Sequence record: OU343167.1
DNA length: 64,000 nucleotides
Reading direction: 5' to 3' (one strand)
Below are positions 51,818 through 57,023 of this stretch, piece after piece. The translations under genes were made by a program, and so were the position numbers. The notes beneath the pieces are model-generated. The model saw only the letters and a list, made by a program, of their open reading frames with translations, was not told where the DNA came from and searched no databases. Position 1 is the first letter of the stretch. Each line of letters begins with the position of its first letter.

Positions 51818-53356
51818 TTAGATAGACCATGCGTCAGAATCGAGATCACCGCCAATTACAGACCCAGGAACAACTTTCAGAGAATAATCTTCCTCTTTAT
51901 CAATGTCCCATGGAATCGTACCGATATTACTAAATGGTAGAAGAACATATTGGTCTTCTTCTGCCGTTACAGTGTTACGGTGTTTACCACGTTGAATAGC
52001 GAGATACGCTTTTCCTTTATGGCGGATGATGTGGTGGAACAGCTCAAGGTCAGGTTCCTGACCCAGACGACGACAACCATCGTAATAACCTTTGTTCGCT
52101 ACTACCTTAACGAAGTCCTCGGTATTTTCACGCATCAGTTGCAGTGCATCAGAACCAAGCTGATGAGGGCTGATGAAAGTGATACCACGAGGAGTAGTGT
52201 AGTTACGCATGCGACGGAATAGAAGACGAATATCGTCACCTGCTACTTTAGCATCAAGTCCTGTCTTAGGTAGCATGTTCAGATAGTCAACTACCAGGAA
52301 TTGAATCTCGTATCCCTGTCCCTGAAGACCATCTAGATAGTTAGTGAAACCACCAATTGTAAATTCAGTGGGGTCGAATCGAACCATCTTAACTTTAAAG
52401 CCATTCTCTTCAAGGCGCGCACAAACATAAGCAGCAGCTTCACGTTTATCGATATCTTTGACAATGACTTCTTCACCCGTTTCGTTTTCACGGATGTATT
52501 TGTAAATAGTCAGAAGGTTATCAGAGATTTCGTTTTCAAGGGTTGCAAATAGAAGAAGAGGCTTCTTCGATTTATCACGCATCCATGGCTTATTAAACAA
52601 TGCGACATGTACAAACAGTAACATAACCAGATACGATTTAAAGTTATGTTGTAGAGCTGCGGTGGTAATAAACTCACCACGACGGAAAGCACCTAGGCTA
52701 CCCAATACACGGTTGAAACCTTTCCAACCTAGTTTGAAAGCACCATCGGCAGACAAAGTAGTTTGTACAGCTTCGAAGAATTCTTCTACACCTTCCGGGT
52801 TGTCAAAATCAAGGCAACCCATTTCAGCGGGATGTCGACTTTCAGCACGAGCCTTTACATAAGGATCGAGCTTAGCCCCCATCTCGTTGATCATACCAGC
52901 GATATCATTACCGCCACCACGGTTAAACAGAAGCTTAGTGGAATACTCTTTCATAATCGCTTTAATAGTTTCATCATTGATGTATTCATTAAGCGAACGA
53001 CGATAAGAGTTGATCCGGTGCATGATAGCCATCCCATCTGGGAAGTTTTCATTAACACCATTTAGTACAGCTTCGTAAAGATAGTTCTCTTCACGGCAGC
53101 TCACTTGCACAGATTGTAGTACTTCAGCGATACTTGGAAATTCGTGCTTAACTTTCTTATTGAGATCTTGAACAAGTTTACGAAGCTCAAGAAAAGTTTG
53201 TCGACCATGATCATGATCAACAGTAGTCTCTTTAATTTCAAGTGAACCAACAATTTTATCAATTAGTTCAGTAGACGGAGAGGCCGGAGAATCTGGGCGG
53301 TGCTCCAAGCAAAGCAGGGTAACGCAACTGACAAGAAGCTGTTTTGGGGAGGACAT
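51818..53356 (-). CDS. dnaB: replicative DnaB-like (SF4) helicase (phiKZ gp118-like)
   Basis: 512 aa; GAFRRGEF then AALQHNFKS (Walker A region), TLENE, LVVDYLNML (Walker B), ISPHQL, GKHR arginine finger. Confidence 0.9.
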   Translation of the reverse strand: MSSPKQLLVSCVTLLCLEHRPDSPASPSTELIDKIVGSLEIKETTVDHDHGRQTFLELRKLVQDLNKKVKHEFPSIAEVLQSVQVSCREENYLYEAVLNGVNENFPDGMAIMHRINSYRRSLNEYINDETIKAIMKEYSTKLLFNRGGGNDIAGMINEMGAKLDPYVKARAESRHPAEMGCLDFDNPEGVEEFFEAVQTTLSADGAFKLGWKGFNRVLGSLGAFRRGEFITTAALQHNFKSYLVMLLFVHVALFNKPWMRDKSKKPLLLFATLENEISDNLLTIYKYIRENETGEEVIVKDIDKREAAAYVCARLEENGFKVKMVRFDPTEFTIGGFTNYLDGLQGQGYEIQFLVVDYLNMLPKTGLDAKVAGDDIRLLFRRMRNYTTPRGITFISPHQLGSDALQLMRENTEDFVKVVANKGYYDGCRRLGQEPDLELFHHIIRHKGKAYLAIQRGKHRNTVTAEEDQYVLLPFSNIGTIPWDIDKEEDYSLKVVPGSVIGGDLDSDAWSI

Positions 53357-53493: not shown

Positions 53494-54030
53494 ATGATCA
53501 AGTTACTTGTAATCCCCGAAGCAGTCTATGATCAGTACAAAGCTGATGGTGTGCAGTTTACTAAGCTACTCTGCCCCAACTATATAGCTTCCGTAAGCTC
53601 GGTAAATGACCTTGCGGAGATCGACGCTGCAATTAATGAATTCCCATTCCGGTTCTGTCAGGGAACTCAGATCGAGAAGGCTGACAGTCCGGTTGTTGGG
53701 ATCGCCCTAAAGGCAACCTCCGACGACGATAATCAATTCAAGATGCAAGAATTGCACAATCGTGTAGAGGAACGTATTGTCAATATGGCTCTGCGTAAGG
53801 CAAATGATTCTGATTATATCAGTGTTTATAGCCTTTATCCTGTAGATGAGTATCTTTGGGTTGCGGTGCAGAAGAGTCTGCACACTGGTTCAAGCGATCC
53901 TGACCGGCTCACAATTAAGGCTAACCACACTTTCTTTGATAGTATGATTAGCGAGCTGACTAGAGCTTGCCCATTTGAGCAAGTAATGGCAACAAATCTC
54001 TTCACTTATTATCTGGAGTCACAAGGCTGA
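53494..54030 (+). CDS. conserved late protein upstream of capsid (gp119-like)
   Basis: 178 aa; synteny. Confidence 0.7.
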   Translation: MIKLLVIPEAVYDQYKADGVQFTKLLCPNYIASVSSVNDLAEIDAAINEFPFRFCQGTQIEKADSPVVGIALKATSDDDNQFKMQELHNRVEERIVNMALRKANDSDYISVYSLYPVDEYLWVAVQKSLHTGSSDPDRLTIKANHTFFDSMISELTRACPFEQVMATNLFTYYLESQG

Positions 54031-54101: not shown

Positions 54102-56327
54102 ATGAAAGACCTTAAATCTCTGTTCAAAGTGAACGGCGACCGCGACCTGACTCGTTTCTCCATGGAATCCTTCCTTGGTAAACTGGACCTGGAAAAAGAC
54201 TACGGCGACAGCATCCTGTCCGCTGGTAGCAAACTGATTAGTAAGATCGGTCTGGAAAACTTCGGCCAACTGAGCGACGAAGATGCTCAAAGTGCTGCTG
54301 GTATGTACGCTAGCCTGCAAAAAGTTGCCCGTCAGTGTGGCTTCGAATCCTTCGAAGGCGCTAACAGCCGTGTAGGCGAAAACCAACTGTCCGCTGCCAC
54401 CATGGCTGCCCTGGCAATGTCCAACTCCACTGAGTACGTTAAGGCTCTGAAACAAGTTGGTAAGAAAATTGCTTCCACTGACAAGAACGTCATTTCGGTT
54501 GAACACCGTTTCGACGGCCCGGCTGGTTCGATCCAAACTTTCGAAGCTGCTGCTGGCGTCGGTCTGGAAAACTACAACGAGAAATCCCAGCGTGACTTCC
54601 GCGTTGTGACCGTTGGTTATAACCTGGCCGCTTCCCGTCAGGATGAGTTCGCTGAGCGTATCTATCCGACCACCGTTATCAACCCGATTGAAGGTGGTGT
54701 TGTTCAGGTTCTTCCGTACATCGCGGTAATGAAAGACGTTTACCACGCTGTTTCCGGTCAGAAGCTCGACAACCAAGAAGTCAACATGGTTGAAGCCTAT
54801 CGTGATCCGTCCATCCTGGACGACGAGTGCACTGCACTGATCCCGGCTATCGATCCTGCTGGCACTAACCTGAAGTACTTCGCTGATCCGGCTCTGCTGC
54901 CTCCGGTAACCGTTATCAACGAACAAAACATGTCCATCGAAACTGCTCCGCTGAAGCCGGGCGTTAAACTGGACCTGATGGGTAACTCGAACGCCAACCT
55001 GCTGATCAACAAAGGCATGCTGGACATTTCGGATACCATCGATCCGTCGGGCCGCCTGAAGGCTCTGTACGTTAAGTTCCAAGGTAAAGTCATCAAGTTC
55101 CAAACTGAACGTCTGCCGCGCGCAGTGTTCCAGCCGGACCTGGTTGGTGATACCCGCGGTGCCAAGATCGACTTCTGGTCGGATGACCTGACTGTTTCGG
55201 CCGTAACCCGCACTACTGACGCTGCACAAACTGCTGGCATGAAAGAACTGGAACAACGTAAGTGGGTTCTGCGTCTGAGCATGCAATTCAGTGGTCACAT
55301 CAGCCTGAGCCGTGGCGATAGCCGTTTCACCATCGGTGAAGTAACTATCGATCGCATCCTGGACGAAGACAAGCGTCGCATCGACCTGGAAACTGGCGAT
55401 GGTAAAGCTCTGGCCGACAGCATTGGCGAAATGGAAATCGTTGGTTTCGACCTCGACACCCGCTTCACCAACACTAACCGCCGTCAGCGTGGTCACCTGC
55501 TGCAAACTCGTGCCCTGCAATTCCGTCACCCGATTCCGATGCATGCTCCGGTTACCCTGCCGCTGAGCACCATGGACGAAGAAGGTCCGGGCGAAGTTGT
55601 TAAGGCTCTGACTGTCAACACCAACATCCGTAACAGCAACAACGCTGTTAAGCGCCTGCTGAACTACCTGGCTCAGCTGAAAGAAGTAACCGCTAACGGT
55701 TTCGACCGTCCGCAGTTCGGTGCTGTTGAAGGTGCTCTATCCGCAGTAATGCGTCCGACCTACCGCTACAAGAAGCTGCACCTGCCTGACATGATCGACA
55801 CCCTGAAGTCGCAAGACCGTTGGGAAGACGTCTGCTCGGCAATCCTGAACGCTGTTAAAGGTGTACTGTTCCCGGCTTACCGTGAATCCAACATCGAAGC
55901 AGCTTTCCGCGTGATCTCCGGTAACCAAGACGAGCGTCCGATGTTCCTGTTCTGCTCGGACAAAGAGATCGCTAACTACCTGATGACCAAGGGCGACGAT
56001 CGTACCCTGGGCGCTTACCTGGAATACGACCTGGTATCGACCAACAACGAACTGTTCGACGGTAAGCTGGTAGTGATTCCGACCCGTAAGACTCCGCAAG
56101 AGAACGACATCCTCAGCTTCGGTCAATTCTACTACGTATCGACCGTAATCGCCGACCTGCCGATCACCCGTGGTGGCCAGCAAGTTACTCGCGAAATCGC
56201 TGCGATTCCGTTCAACCTGCACGTTAACAACATCCCGTTCGCTCTCGAATTCGACGTTACTGGCTTCGAAGAAGTGATGGGTGAGTCTCAGTGGAACAAG
56301 CCCCTGGTTGAAGCCGTAAAAGGTTGA
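54102..56327 (+). CDS. major capsid protein (phiKZ gp120-like)
   Basis: 741 aa, strongly biased codons; GLE-NYNEKSQRDFR maturation site; RQDEFAERIYPT. Confidence 0.92.
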   Translation: MKDLKSLFKVNGDRDLTRFSMESFLGKLDLEKDYGDSILSAGSKLISKIGLENFGQLSDEDAQSAAGMYASLQKVARQCGFESFEGANSRVGENQLSAATMAALAMSNSTEYVKALKQVGKKIASTDKNVISVEHRFDGPAGSIQTFEAAAGVGLENYNEKSQRDFRVVTVGYNLAASRQDEFAERIYPTTVINPIEGGVVQVLPYIAVMKDVYHAVSGQKLDNQEVNMVEAYRDPSILDDECTALIPAIDPAGTNLKYFADPALLPPVTVINEQNMSIETAPLKPGVKLDLMGNSNANLLINKGMLDISDTIDPSGRLKALYVKFQGKVIKFQTERLPRAVFQPDLVGDTRGAKIDFWSDDLTVSAVTRTTDAAQTAGMKELEQRKWVLRLSMQFSGHISLSRGDSRFTIGEVTIDRILDEDKRRIDLETGDGKALADSIGEMEIVGFDLDTRFTNTNRRQRGHLLQTRALQFRHPIPMHAPVTLPLSTMDEEGPGEVVKALTVNTNIRNSNNAVKRLLNYLAQLKEVTANGFDRPQFGAVEGALSAVMRPTYRYKKLHLPDMIDTLKSQDRWEDVCSAILNAVKGVLFPAYRESNIEAAFRVISGNQDERPMFLFCSDKEIANYLMTKGDDRTLGAYLEYDLVSTNNELFDGKLVVIPTRKTPQENDILSFGQFYYVSTVIADLPITRGGQQVTREIAAIPFNLHVNNIPFALEFDVTGFEEVMGESQWNKPLVEAVKG

Positions 56328-56436
56328 ACTGGAAAGGGTACCTTCCGTAAGCTTGAAAATGGTACTACCCGTTATCTTGAAGACGGAGTGGCCCGCCGCC
56401 TAGAGCGGTAAAGCGGAAGTGTTAAGCTGACTGCTG

Positions 56437-56476
56437 GCATAACAGCCTCTACCTTCGGGTAGAGGCTTTATGTCGT
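56437..56476 (+). terminator. capsid operon terminator
   Basis: GGCATAACAGCCTCTACC-TTCG-GGTAGAGGCTTTATGTC. Confidence 0.85.
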
Positions 56477-56488
56477 CATTAAAAAATA

Positions 56489-56513
56489 TTTCAAATCTAT
56501 ATTACGGTATTGA
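56489..56513 (+). promoter_or_regulatory. early promoter (TATATTAC 56498-56505)
   Basis: TTTCAAATC-TATATTAC-GGTATTGA upstream of operon containing nvRNAP subunit. Confidence 0.7.
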
Positions 56514-56543
56514 AGAATCATTCCCTAATTAGAGGATCAGACA

Positions 56544-57023
56544 ATGTTCTGGAATACACACGGGCATCATGTTGAGCAAGAGCTCACTGATTCCCAAATG
56601 AATCCTGGCGACATTGTCGTCATGAAAGAAAATACTACGGTTAGTAATAATACGTCTAACCAAACCAATTCTCAAACCACCACTACTATTCATCCTACCC
56701 AGGATGAGAATATGTCCCATTTTGCTAATCGCTTCGAGAAGCAAATAAGACATGTTAATATATCCAATGGCCGTTGTTATGAATCGGGAGGTACCCCTGA
56801 AGAAAAACAACGTTCGCGCAACACGCGGAAGGGTAAAGGTAAAACGCGTGTTGCGCATGGGAAACGTGGAGACAGAAATCATAGAGATTCGAAAGCATCC
56901 CAAACGAGTCGATATGAACCTAGTCAAGAACGGAGTAGGCCCAAAGGACGTAAAGTAGAAATGGTATTGGATAGGATTGTTTTAAATGGTAAAGATCAAC
57001 CGTTCCCGTGCGGGTCATATTGA
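56544..57023 (+). CDS. basic, low-complexity hypothetical protein
   Basis: 159 aa, GAGGA RBS; T/N-rich then R/K-rich. Confidence 0.5.
   Translation: MFWNTHGHHVEQELTDSQMNPGDIVVMKENTTVSNNTSNQTNSQTTTTIHPTQDENMSHFANRFEKQIRHVNISNGRCYESGGTPEEKQRSRNTRKGKGKTRVAHGKRGDRNHRDSKASQTSRYEPSQERSRPKGRKVEMVLDRIVLNGKDQPFPCGSY

What the first reader, a model, noticed from the sequence alone, without database searches (positions are those of the whole stretch)
56325..56411. Capsid UGA followed in frame by a 27-codon repeat-like peptide: candidate stop-codon readthrough
Seen: ...GTA AAA GGT TGA ACT GGA AAG GGT ACC TTC CGT AAG CTT GAA AAT GGT ACT ACC CGT TAT CTT GAA GAC GGA GTG GCC CGC CGC CTA GAG CGG TAA = TGKGTFRKLENGTTRYLEDGVARRLER*, lying before the terminator (56437) with no start codon or RBS of its own. 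It has three R-x-L-E(-N/D-G) units after a G-rich linker, unlikely for random 3' UTR. The most expressed gene uses UGA-A, whereas most inner-body genes end in TAA. Established: UGA is the leakiest bacterial stop; T7 10B and Qbeta A1 are minor extended capsid forms. Inference: a minor capsid species displaying a beta-hairpin/metal-binding tag.
Basis: partly seen in the sequence, partly recalled or inferred. Interest (0 to 1): 0.72.

Follow-up and report, generated by a model that had tools for sequence, protein, structure and literature searches.

The report
Conserved read-through tail on jumbo-phage capsid
The major capsid gene of this phiKZ-like Pseudomonas jumbo phage ends in a UGA stop followed in frame by a 27-codon peptide that is kept under protein-level selection across the whole phiKZ-like clade, so a small share of capsid subunits very probably carries an extra tail, and that tail is the same motif as the C-terminal tail of another virion protein (phiKZ gp143).

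Summary
The 741-codon capsid ORF (54102-56324) ends in TGA (56325-56327). Twenty-seven in-frame codons and a TAA (56409-56411) follow, then a terminator hairpin. The window is a PA1C/PS119XW-type phage. In 25 distinct relatives (phiKZ, phiPA3, 201phi2-1, Phabio, Psa21/D6, Noxifer, metagenomic contigs) the capsid gene ends in TGA, followed by 24-30 in-frame codons with three R-x-L-E-D-G units. Twenty-one relatives that end in TAA have no such tail. The tail shows coding selection: pN/pS is 0.53 in the read-through frame (p=1.6e-8) against 0.9-1.1 in the other frames; invariant Arg/Glu/Gly columns use several synonymous codons; indels are in frame. No relative has a sense codon at the stop. I found no suppressor tRNA, SECIS match or strong conserved RNA fold. 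The tail matches the conserved C-terminal tail of the DUF7941 virion protein gp143 (hhalign E=1.5e-12). Published phiKZ mutants deleted just behind the stop are viable, so the tail is accessory. Best reading: selected low-level UGA read-through makes a minor capsid isoform with a docking-type tail. Translation itself is inferred, not shown, and I found no report of it in the papers searched.

The parts
54102..56324 (+). Major capsid protein ORF (741 codons), homologue of phiKZ gp120 (Pfam PhiKZ_MCP)
   Evidence: ORF list. It is 100% identical to the capsid genes of PS119XW, HHBS36_1 and phiLBG22, and 73% identical at the DNA level to phiKZ gp120. Homologues carry PF25620. Its G+C is 52-56%, against 38-46% in the flanks.
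56325..56327 (+). UGA stop of the capsid gene, followed by A; the proposed leaky (read-through) stop
   Evidence: TGA is kept in 25 distinct lineages that have the tail, and TAA is found in 21 that lack it. None of 120 homologue clusters has a sense codon here. The base after TGA is A in 18, G in 6, C in 1 and T in 0 lineages.
56328..56408 (+). 27-codon in-frame extension: a G-rich linker (TGKGT) and three R-x-L-E-(N/D)-G units, ending in RRLER
   Evidence: alignment A4. pN/pS is 0.53 in this frame only. Invariant R/E/G columns use 2-5 synonymous codons. hhalign against the gp143 tails gives E=1.5e-12.
56409..56411 (+). TAA that ends the extension
   Evidence: In relatives the second stop is TAA, TGA or TAG, always 24-30 codons after the first. 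Sequence conservation collapses directly behind it.
56444..56467 (+). G+C-rich hairpin (10-bp stem, TTCG loop) followed by TTTATG: probable transcription terminator of the capsid transcript
   Evidence: Fold. The hairpin keeps its position in all relatives, with different stem sequences. The simple scanner does not call it because the T run is short.
56495..56505 (+). ATCTATATTAC motif conserved in all relatives, inside an A/T-rich spacer; promoter-like element for the downstream genes
   Evidence: Invariant in alignment A1. The hairpin-spacer-motif cassette recurs at 10 or more other places in the genome of an identical relative. The promoter role rests on my recollection of phiKZ promoter motifs and was not tested.

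Best explanation
The capsid gene ends in a UGA that evolution keeps as a leaky stop. Most ribosomes terminate there and make the normal 741-residue capsid protein. A small fraction probably inserts an amino acid at UGA, most likely Trp from the host's near-cognate tRNA, because the phage has no suppressor tRNA. These ribosomes add 27 more residues before stopping at TAA.

The added tail is a short linker plus three R-x-L-E-D-G units. It is the same module as the conserved C-terminal tail of the DUF7941 virion protein gp143. In phiKZ the capsid protein's C-terminal arms meet at the centre of each hexamer, and in pentamers they bind an outer-surface protein. A rare extended subunit would therefore present one such tail at a few capsomer centres.

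I infer that the tail is a docking peptide. It would give the head a limited number of attachment sites for whatever binds the gp143-type tail, and the N-terminal domain of DUF7941 proteins is the leading candidate. The function is accessory, not essential.

Shown: the sequence, its conservation, the coding-type selection, the link between TGA and the tail, the match to gp143 tails, and the absence of a suppressor tRNA.

Inferred: that it is translated, at what rate, which amino acid is inserted, where the tail sits, and what it binds.
For: - **Conservation with the stop kept.** Twenty-five distinct lineages have TGA plus a 24-30 codon tail with the same motif.
- **Coding signature.** Over 11 independent pairs, pN/pS is 0.53 (Fisher p=1.6e-8) in the read-through frame, against 0.90 and 1.10 in the other frames. 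Stops per frame are 0, 35 and 34. Window versus HPP-Temi shows 4 changes, all synonymous. Invariant Arg, Glu and Gly columns use up to five codons, including CGN/AGR. Length changes are in frame.
- **Loss of the tail goes with a change of stop.** L042 (nested in the clade with 100/99 support) has a deletion of about 59 nt and TAA. L046/L064 and L061 also have TAA. The tree needs 4 changes of stop, and the motif follows in 3.
- **No sense codon at the stop.** None of 120 homologue clusters carries the motif fused to the capsid protein.
- **Stop context.** The base after TGA is never T (A18/G6/C1), whereas T follows 10 of the other 21 TGA stops in the window.
- **No alternative decoding apparatus.** The genome of an identical relative has 7 tRNAs and none reads UGA. 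There is no SECIS or other Rfam match.
- **The tail is a real protein module.** It matches gp143-family C-terminal tails reciprocally: HMM E=0.005 and 0.0016 and hhalign prob 97.7%, E=1.5e-12.
- **Geometry.** The C-terminal arms of phiKZ gp120 form the central six-helix bundle of hexamers, and in pentamers they bind the outer protein gp244 (PMC11297242).
- **Accessory role fits the experiments.** phiKZ escapers with 27-69 bp deletions directly behind the stop, and insertions there, are viable (bioRxiv 10.1101/2022.02.14.480438).
Against: - No peptide, ribosome footprint or extra protein band has been reported. I found no Ribo-seq of these phages.
- The phiKZ cryo-EM model ends at the annotated last residue and reports no extra density assigned to a tail.
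- Selection on the tail is moderate (pN/pS 0.53), far weaker than expected for a core structural element.
- Independent evolutionary events are few (4 contrasts), so the TGA/tail link cannot reach significance in a phylogenetically corrected sign test.
- One relative without a tail (L075) also ends in TGA, although a TAG follows it directly.
- Natural losses and viable laboratory deletions show that the phage can do without the tail.
- The proposed binding partner is an analogy to AlphaFold predictions for other DUF7941 proteins. It is not a test, and the linker of phiKZ gp127 lacks the motif.
Confidence: 0.72

Rival explanations
1. The stretch behind the stop is not translated. It is conserved as an RNA or DNA element (a 3' UTR structure, processing site or protein-binding repeat), and the open frame is a by-product.
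For: The region is G+C-rich and folds well together with the terminator (z=-3.96). RNAalifold finds a weak long-range CCGU/ACGG pairing with a few compensatory changes. The repeat is also visible at the DNA level (CGT NNN CTT GAA).
Against: The consensus fold is marginal (-3.9 kcal/mol, covariation term -0.2). Substitutions follow the codon structure of one frame only. Arg columns switch between CGN and AGR, Gly columns use all four codons, and indels are multiples of three. The same peptide motif ends an unquestioned protein, gp143. There is no Rfam match.
Confidence: 0.06
2. UGA is decoded efficiently here, by selenocysteine insertion or a dedicated suppressor, so most or all capsid subunits carry the tail.
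For: UGA is the Sec codon, and Pseudomonas has the Sec machinery (my recollection). A weak stem can be drawn downstream of the UGA.
Against: No SECIS-type match was found, and the weak stem starts about 17 nt behind the UGA. No tRNA in the phage genome reads UGA. About 36% of genes in the window end in TGA, so a general suppressor would be harmful. The phiKZ capsid model ends at the annotated C-terminus in 1620 chains. If full occupancy were tolerated, a sense codon should appear in some lineage, and none does among 120 clusters.
Confidence: 0.03
3. Read-through happens only as unselected noise, and the peptide has no function of its own. Its conservation reflects recent common ancestry or a constraint unrelated to the product.
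For: The tail is dispensable in the laboratory and has been lost several times in nature. pN/pS is only moderately below 1.
Against: The clade spans capsid proteins down to about 63% identity, and silent sites in the tail are near saturation (pS up to 0.6), yet six positions are invariant or nearly so. The frame stays open in all 25 lineages. Where the tail is lost, the sequence decays and the stop changes. A functionless peptide would not match the conserved gp143 tail at E=1.5e-12.
Confidence: 0.08
4. The tail acts in cis during its own translation, as a nascent peptide or by ribosome occupancy that affects the terminator, mRNA stability or expression of the downstream genes, rather than as part of the virion.
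For: In several relatives the second stop lies only 7-11 nt in front of the terminator hairpin, so a ribosome there would open the stem.
Against: The spacing varies from 7 to 31 nt, and in this window it is 32 nt with another small stem between. A regulatory nascent peptide does not explain why the same motif sits at the C-terminus of gp143.
Confidence: 0.05
5. The 27 codons are an independent small gene, started by re-initiation at or just after the capsid stop.
For: In the L035/L072 lineage a gene caller does start a separate gene at an ATG two codons behind the capsid TGA.
Against: The RxLEDG tails have no conserved ATG/GTG/TTG and no Shine-Dalgarno sequence at a usable distance. The strict link to TGA rather than TAA would be unexplained.
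Confidence: 0.03

Closest known systems
Qbeta A1 (read-through) protein: UGA read-through of the coat gene of an ssRNA phage
   Same: A leaky UGA ends the major coat gene and is followed by an in-frame extension. A minor extended coat species is made beside the major one, using the host's normal tRNAs. (The Qbeta facts are from my own knowledge.)
   Different: [quoted passage not shown] Translation is not yet shown.
T7 10B / T3, Lactobacillus A2, Listeria A118/PSA: minor capsid isoforms made by programmed frameshifting at the 3' end of the capsid gene
   Same: dsDNA phages make a second, C-terminally extended capsid protein from the same gene by recoding (review PMC5009743). T7 10B is likewise non-essential (my knowledge).
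   Different: Those cases use a -1 or +1 frameshift at a slippery site. Here the extension is in the zero frame behind a stop codon, so no frameshift is involved.
C-terminal tail of the DUF7941 virion protein gp143 of phiKZ-like phages (phrog_2935; 'lysis regulator' in PMC12894885)
   Same: It has the same three-unit R-x-L-E-D-G motif ending in R-x-L-E at the very C-terminus, with profile-profile E=1.5e-12. Both gp143 and the capsid tail are non-essential.
   Different: In gp143 the tail follows a DUF7941 N-terminal domain (Foldseek hit to the phiKZ baseplate chain 9xqd_0) and is made in every copy. On the capsid protein it sits behind a stop codon. The gp143 tail is also present in lineages whose capsid gene has no tail (the L063 contig).
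Hoc of T4 and Ig-like decoration domains added to phage structural proteins by recoding
   Same: These give sub-stoichiometric, non-essential decoration at capsomer centres (the Hoc facts are from my knowledge). One relative (L035/L072) has an in-frame ORF containing a Big_2 Ig-like domain directly behind a capsid TGA.
   Different: The tail in this window is not an Ig-like domain and is far too short to be a folded domain.

Membership tests
Programmed stop-codon read-through giving an extended coat protein (Qbeta A1 type) | Coat gene ends in a leaky stop (UGA) that is conserved among relatives | tested here: met
   TGA is found in 25 distinct lineages with the tail, and no sense codon in 120 clusters.
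Programmed stop-codon read-through giving an extended coat protein (Qbeta A1 type) | In-frame downstream ORF under protein-coding selection | tested here: met
   pN/pS is 0.53 (p=1.6e-8) in frame 0 only, stops per frame are 0/35/34, and invariant columns vary in synonymous codons.
Programmed stop-codon read-through giving an extended coat protein (Qbeta A1 type) | Extended protein is made and found in the virion | not testable with these tools
   This needs mass spectrometry, western blot or Ribo-seq. No such data were found in the papers searched.
Programmed stop-codon read-through giving an extended coat protein (Qbeta A1 type) | Stop context that favours read-through | tested here: inconclusive
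   The base after TGA is A18/G6/C1/T0, against T in 10 of 21 other TGA stops in the window. The lineages are not independent, and the context rules for Pseudomonas are not known to me.
Programmed stop-codon read-through giving an extended coat protein (Qbeta A1 type) | Extended protein is essential for infectivity | tested here: not met
   From the literature: phiKZ with 27-69 bp deleted directly behind the stop, or with a gene inserted there, forms plaques. Natural losses also occur.
Minor capsid isoform by programmed ribosomal frameshift (T7 10B type) | Extension lies in the -1 or +1 frame and is reached at a slippery site | tested here: not met
   The extension is in the zero frame directly behind the stop, and the other two frames are full of stops.
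Selenocysteine recoding of UGA | SECIS hairpin immediately downstream of UGA | tested here: not met
   There is no Rfam match at E up to 10. The consensus fold is marginal and starts about 17 nt downstream.
Stop-codon reassignment or phage-encoded suppressor tRNA | tRNA with an anticodon that reads UGA in the phage genome | tested here: not met
   ARAGORN on the whole genome of an identical relative finds Thr, Leu(2), Tyr, Asn, Met and Pro only, and none in the window.
gp143-type C-terminal tail (DUF7941 protein subfamily, phrog_2935) | Three R-x-L-E-D-G-x-x units ending in R-x-L-E at the C-terminus | tested here: met
   hhalign of A4 against A6 gives prob 97.7%, E=1.5e-12 over 26 columns. Reciprocal HMM hits are the only ones in the genome.
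gp143-type C-terminal tail (DUF7941 protein subfamily, phrog_2935) | Tail preceded by a DUF7941 N-terminal domain | tested here: not met
   The tail follows the HK97-type capsid protein, not a DUF7941 domain, so only the tail module is shared.
gp143-type C-terminal tail (DUF7941 protein subfamily, phrog_2935) | Tail docks on the N-terminal domain of another DUF7941 protomer | not testable with these tools
   This is proposed for other DUF7941 proteins from AlphaFold models and filaments of Goslar gp22. No multimer prediction is available here.
Ig-like decoration domains appended by recoding | Extension contains an Ig-like fold | tested here: not met
   The window tail has no Pfam hit. Only the unrelated L035/L072 extension has Big_2 (E=4e-9).

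The most novel reading that the evidence does not exclude
The read-through tail is a capsid-borne copy of the gp143 docking peptide. A few capsomer centres per head would then bind the DUF7941 N-terminal domain, either anchoring gp143 or DUF7941 filaments on the head, or titrating gp143 (a holin regulator) as capsids accumulate. The second option would couple lysis timing to head production. Leaky termination would set the copy number, because only about one tail fits where six C-termini meet.
Probability: 0.2. Interest if true: 0.85.

Novelty: new variant of a known kind. Interest (0 to 1): 0.7.

Why it matters
phiKZ and its relatives are the main models for nucleus-forming jumbo phages and are used in phage therapy. 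Their capsid has been solved at near-atomic resolution, and yet the papers I searched mention no second form of its major protein.

- If the tail is made, the annotated proteome of every phage in this clade lacks a virion component. Mass-spectrometry searches and cryo-EM maps should then be re-examined with the extended sequence.
- It would be a clear case in a dsDNA phage of stop-codon read-through, rather than frameshifting, setting the dose of a capsid decoration.
- The shared tail links the capsid to gp143, a protein tied both to the virion and to lysis control, and gives a concrete binding hypothesis to test.
- The site directly behind the capsid stop is a favoured place for inserting cargo in engineered phiKZ and OMKO1. 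Such constructs remove or displace the tail, which may explain the modest virulence change reported for engineered OMKO1.

Tried and rejected
- **Rfam scan of 56200-56560 at E up to 10:** only chance hits.
- **RNAalifold on 21 tails:** marginal structure.
- **tRNA scans of the window and of a whole identical genome:** nothing reads UGA.
- **Pfam on the tail peptides:** no hit.
- **PDB sequence search with the tail profile:** nothing below E=1.
- **AF2 of a 30-residue tail with its alignment:** low confidence, pLDDT 62, one hairpin.
- **Simple terminator and promoter scanner:** calls nothing in 56200-56600, because the T run behind the hairpin is short.
- **Phylogenetically corrected sign test of TGA against the tail:** too few independent events (4) to be significant.
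- **Search for a capsid homologue with a sense codon at the stop:** none among 120 clusters.
- **Search for the motif in the linkers of phiKZ gp126 and gp127:** absent.
- **Structure job that included sequences from annotated-record loci:** I repeated it with database proteins only.
- **Literature searches for read-through of gp120, Ribo-seq of phiKZ, or an extended capsid protein:** nothing relevant.
- **Sequencing error:** considered and rejected, because many independent genomes share the TGA.
- **The overlapping 47-codon ORF annotated in HPP-Temi (another frame, not conserved):** considered and rejected.
Full report
**1. What is in the sequence**

The window is a Pseudomonas jumbo phage of the PA1C/PS119XW type (Pawinskivirus). 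The stretch 55900-56560 is 100% identical to PS119XW, HHBS36_1 and phiLBG22. It is 99% identical to PA1C, 96% to HPP-Temi, 80% to Phabio and 73% to phiKZ.

The ORF 54102..56327 encodes the 741-residue major capsid protein, the homologue of phiKZ gp120. Twenty-seven in-frame sense codons follow (56328-56408), then TAA (56409-56411). After that come a G+C-rich hairpin (about 56444-56467) with TTTATG behind it, an A/T-rich spacer with ATCTATATTAC (56495-56505), and the next gene at 56544.

The tail peptide has a short G-rich linker and three R-x-L-E-(N/D)-G units. It contains no conserved start codon.

TGA is a common stop in this phage: 21 of 58 long ORFs use it, against 33 TAA and 4 TAG.

**2. 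Comparative test**

I collected capsid-gene 3' ends from four sources:
- annotated phage records;
- IMG/VR;
- metagenome contigs;
- contigs that encode database homologues.

In each I read the frame through the stop.

Twenty-five distinct lineages end in TGA and continue in frame for 24-30 codons with the same motif. They include phiKZ/PA7, phiPA3, 201phi2-1, Phabio, Psa21, D6, Noxifer and many uncultured relatives. The consensus is x-x-x-G-x-x-R-x-x-E-D-G-T-x-R-Y-L-E-D-G-x-x-R-R-L-x-x; R7, G12 and G20 are invariant, and E10, R15 and E18 nearly so (alignment A4).

Twenty-one distinct lineages end in TAA and have only 0-52 unrelated codons behind. Five of these are distant chimalliviruses of Xanthomonas, Erwinia, Salmonella and Ralstonia.

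There are two exceptions:
- L075 ends in TGA followed at once by TAG.
- L035/L072 end in TGA followed in frame by a 203-codon ORF with a Big_2 Ig-like domain.

None of 120 homologue clusters in the 5.8-billion-protein collection has the motif fused to the capsid protein, so no lineage has replaced the stop by a sense codon.

**3. Is the tail under protein-level selection?**

- Window versus HPP-Temi differs at four positions in the tail, and all four changes are synonymous.
- Over eleven phylogenetically separate pairs, pS is 0.43 and pN is 0.23 in the read-through frame (ratio 0.53, Fisher p=1.6e-8). The same columns read in the other two frames give ratios of 0.90 and 1.10, neither significant.
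- The invariant columns are encoded by several codons. Arg uses CGT/CGA/CGC/CGG, and at another position CGN as well as AGR. Gly uses all four codons. Glu uses both.
- Length differences are in frame.
- The other two frames carry 35 and 34 stops across 24 sequences.
- Directly behind the second stop the alignment falls apart until the terminator hairpin.

This is the signature of a translated sequence, under moderate rather than strong constraint.

**4. Phylogeny**

A maximum-likelihood tree was built from the capsid C-terminal half, with the last 12 codons left out. It puts the lineages with a tail in one well-supported part of the tree.

TAA lineages are nested inside that part: L042 (within a 100/99 clade), L046/L064 and L061. 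L035 (TGA plus the Ig-like ORF) lies among TAA lineages. The stop identity needs four changes, and the motif changes with it in three.

In L042 a deletion of about 59 nt has removed the first two units, a remnant of the third is still alignable, and the stop has become TAA.

The events are too few for a corrected sign test (median p 0.25). I therefore treat the link between TGA and the tail as consistent support, not proof. Noxifer was not in the tree; it shows that the tail reaches down to capsids about 63% identical.

**5. Alternatives for decoding**

- The window has no tRNA gene.
- The whole genome of an identical relative has seven: Thr, two Leu, Tyr, Asn, Met and Pro. None reads UGA, and there is no Trp or Sec tRNA.
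- Rfam gives no SECIS or other match.
- RNAalifold finds only a marginal consensus stem.

Decoding would therefore rest on the host, most simply on near-cognate tRNA-Trp as in other bacterial UGA read-through. That point is from my own knowledge and was not tested.

The base after the capsid TGA is A in 18, G in 6, C in 1 and T in 0 lineages. T follows 10 of the other 21 TGA stops in the window. This suggests a selected context, but the lineages are not independent.

**6. What the tail is**

A motif search over the six-frame translation of the complete genome of the identical relative found the motif only twice. One hit is behind the capsid stop. [quoted passage not shown]

This ORF is the homologue of phiKZ gp143 (phrog_2935, 'virion structural protein'). 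Most of its 77 homologue clusters (65 by a one-unit pattern; the rest carry degenerate units) end in the same three-unit tail, typically R-Y-L-E-D-G-x-x-R-L-x-E-x-G-x-x-R-E-L-E-H.

The match is reciprocal:
- A profile of capsid tails finds the gp143 ORF as the only other hit in the genome (E=0.005; the next hit is 0.63).
- A profile of the gp143 family finds the capsid tail (E=0.0016).
- The profile-profile comparison gives 97.7% probability, E=1.5e-12, over 26 columns.

AF2 models the gp143 homologue with confidence (pLDDT 87.6). It shows a globular domain followed by the tail at pLDDT 71-79, with a beta-bridge at each R-x-L. The only significant structural match is a 150-residue chain of the phiKZ outer baseplate (9xqd_0, E=2e-6).

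A 2026 preprint on phage Goslar identifies that chain as the N-terminal DUF7941 domain of gp127. The same preprint lists gp126, gp127 and gp143 as the DUF7941 proteins of phiKZ. It proposes that such proteins assemble head to tail, with the linker or tail of one protomer docking on the N-terminal domain of the next.

Another paper describes gp143 as a cytoplasmic regulator of the holin gp142. Transposon data show that gp143 is non-essential. The gp143 tail also occurs in lineages whose capsid gene has no tail, so it is the older and wider feature.

**7. Where the tail would sit, and whether it is needed**

In the phiKZ capsid structure the protein is modelled from residue 164 to its last annotated residue, 747. 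The C-terminal arms (728-747) of the six subunits of a hexamer form a central six-helix bundle around a pore of about 9 Å. In pentamers the arms swing outwards and bind the outer-surface protein gp244.

A tail added to residue 747 would thus start at the capsomer centre, where six C-termini meet and space is limited. That fits a product that must stay rare.

Three published Cas13a escape mutants of phiKZ carry deletions of 27-69 bp starting immediately behind the capsid stop; one changes the stop to TAG. A gene inserted at that place is tolerated. In OMKO1 such an insertion left the host range unchanged and virulence modestly affected. The tail is therefore not needed for plaque formation, like T7 10B and T4 Hoc (my knowledge).

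**8. Conclusion and limits**

The best explanation is selected low-level UGA read-through that gives a minor capsid isoform.

I add that its tail is the gp143-type C-terminal module, most likely a docking peptide, and that the trait marks the Pseudomonas phiKZ-like clade.

The following remain unshown:
- that the tail is translated;
- at what rate;
- which residue is inserted at the stop;
- whether the product enters the virion;
- what it binds.

The papers I could search contain no report of this read-through. The library lacks most subscription journals, so a prior report cannot be excluded.

I class it as a new variant of a known kind: recoding at the end of a capsid gene, by read-through as in Qbeta, but in a dsDNA jumbo phage and with a tail borrowed from or shared with another virion protein.

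Noticed in passing
L067:44866-45399 (genome of identical relative OU343167; would be about window coordinate 82,700, outside the window): A 177-residue homologue of phiKZ gp143 (DUF7941 domain, virion protein, reported holin regulator) ends in the same three-unit R-x-L-E-D-G tail as the capsid read-through peptide. The tail is conserved in most of 77 homologue clusters.
   Followed up: yes
L035:2344-2958, L072/L073:3766-4380: In an uncultured relative from a TAA-type clade the capsid gene ends in TGA-A after a G/D/T-rich linker. A 203-codon ORF with a Big_2 Ig-like domain follows in frame. An ATG sits two codons behind the stop with no well-spaced ribosome-binding site, so this is either a separate gene or a second, independent read-through decoration.
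   Followed up: partly
window 56436-56513, and 10 or more other places in L065-L070: The hairpin + TTTATG + A/T-rich spacer + ATCTATATTAC cassette behind the capsid gene recurs across the genome (blastn). It is conserved in position in all relatives, with different stem sequences. It is probably a terminator-promoter unit of the phage's own transcription system.
   Followed up: partly
window 54200-56450: The capsid gene and its tail have 52-56% G+C, while the neighbouring genes have 38-46%. Codon use looks adapted to the G+C-rich host, as expected for the most highly expressed late gene, and the tail shares this composition.
   Followed up: no
L075:3823-3828: One relative without a tail ends its capsid gene in TGA followed directly by TAG (a tandem stop). 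This fits UGA being leaky enough to need a back-up stop.
   Followed up: no
P0065-P0120: Many environmental capsid homologues end in long low-complexity G/T/D/E/P tails, often finishing in TP, with TAA stops and nothing behind. They look like linkers with no attached domain.
   Followed up: partly
L003:1882-2025 (HPP-Temi record): The deposited annotation has a 47-codon 'hypothetical protein' that overlaps the capsid stop and the tail in another frame. It is not conserved in the window or other relatives and is probably a gene-caller artefact caused by the unannotated coding signal.
   Followed up: partly
L070:37861-48043 (outside the window): Seven phage tRNA genes lie in one 10-kb cluster: Thr, Leu x2, Tyr, Asn, Met and Pro.
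   Followed up: no
window 53494-54030 and 51818-53356: Upstream neighbours are a homologue of the minor capsid protein gp119 (Pfam PhiKZ_gp119 in relatives) and, on the other strand, a divergent DnaB-like helicase. The gene order is conserved in every relative fetched.
   Followed up: no
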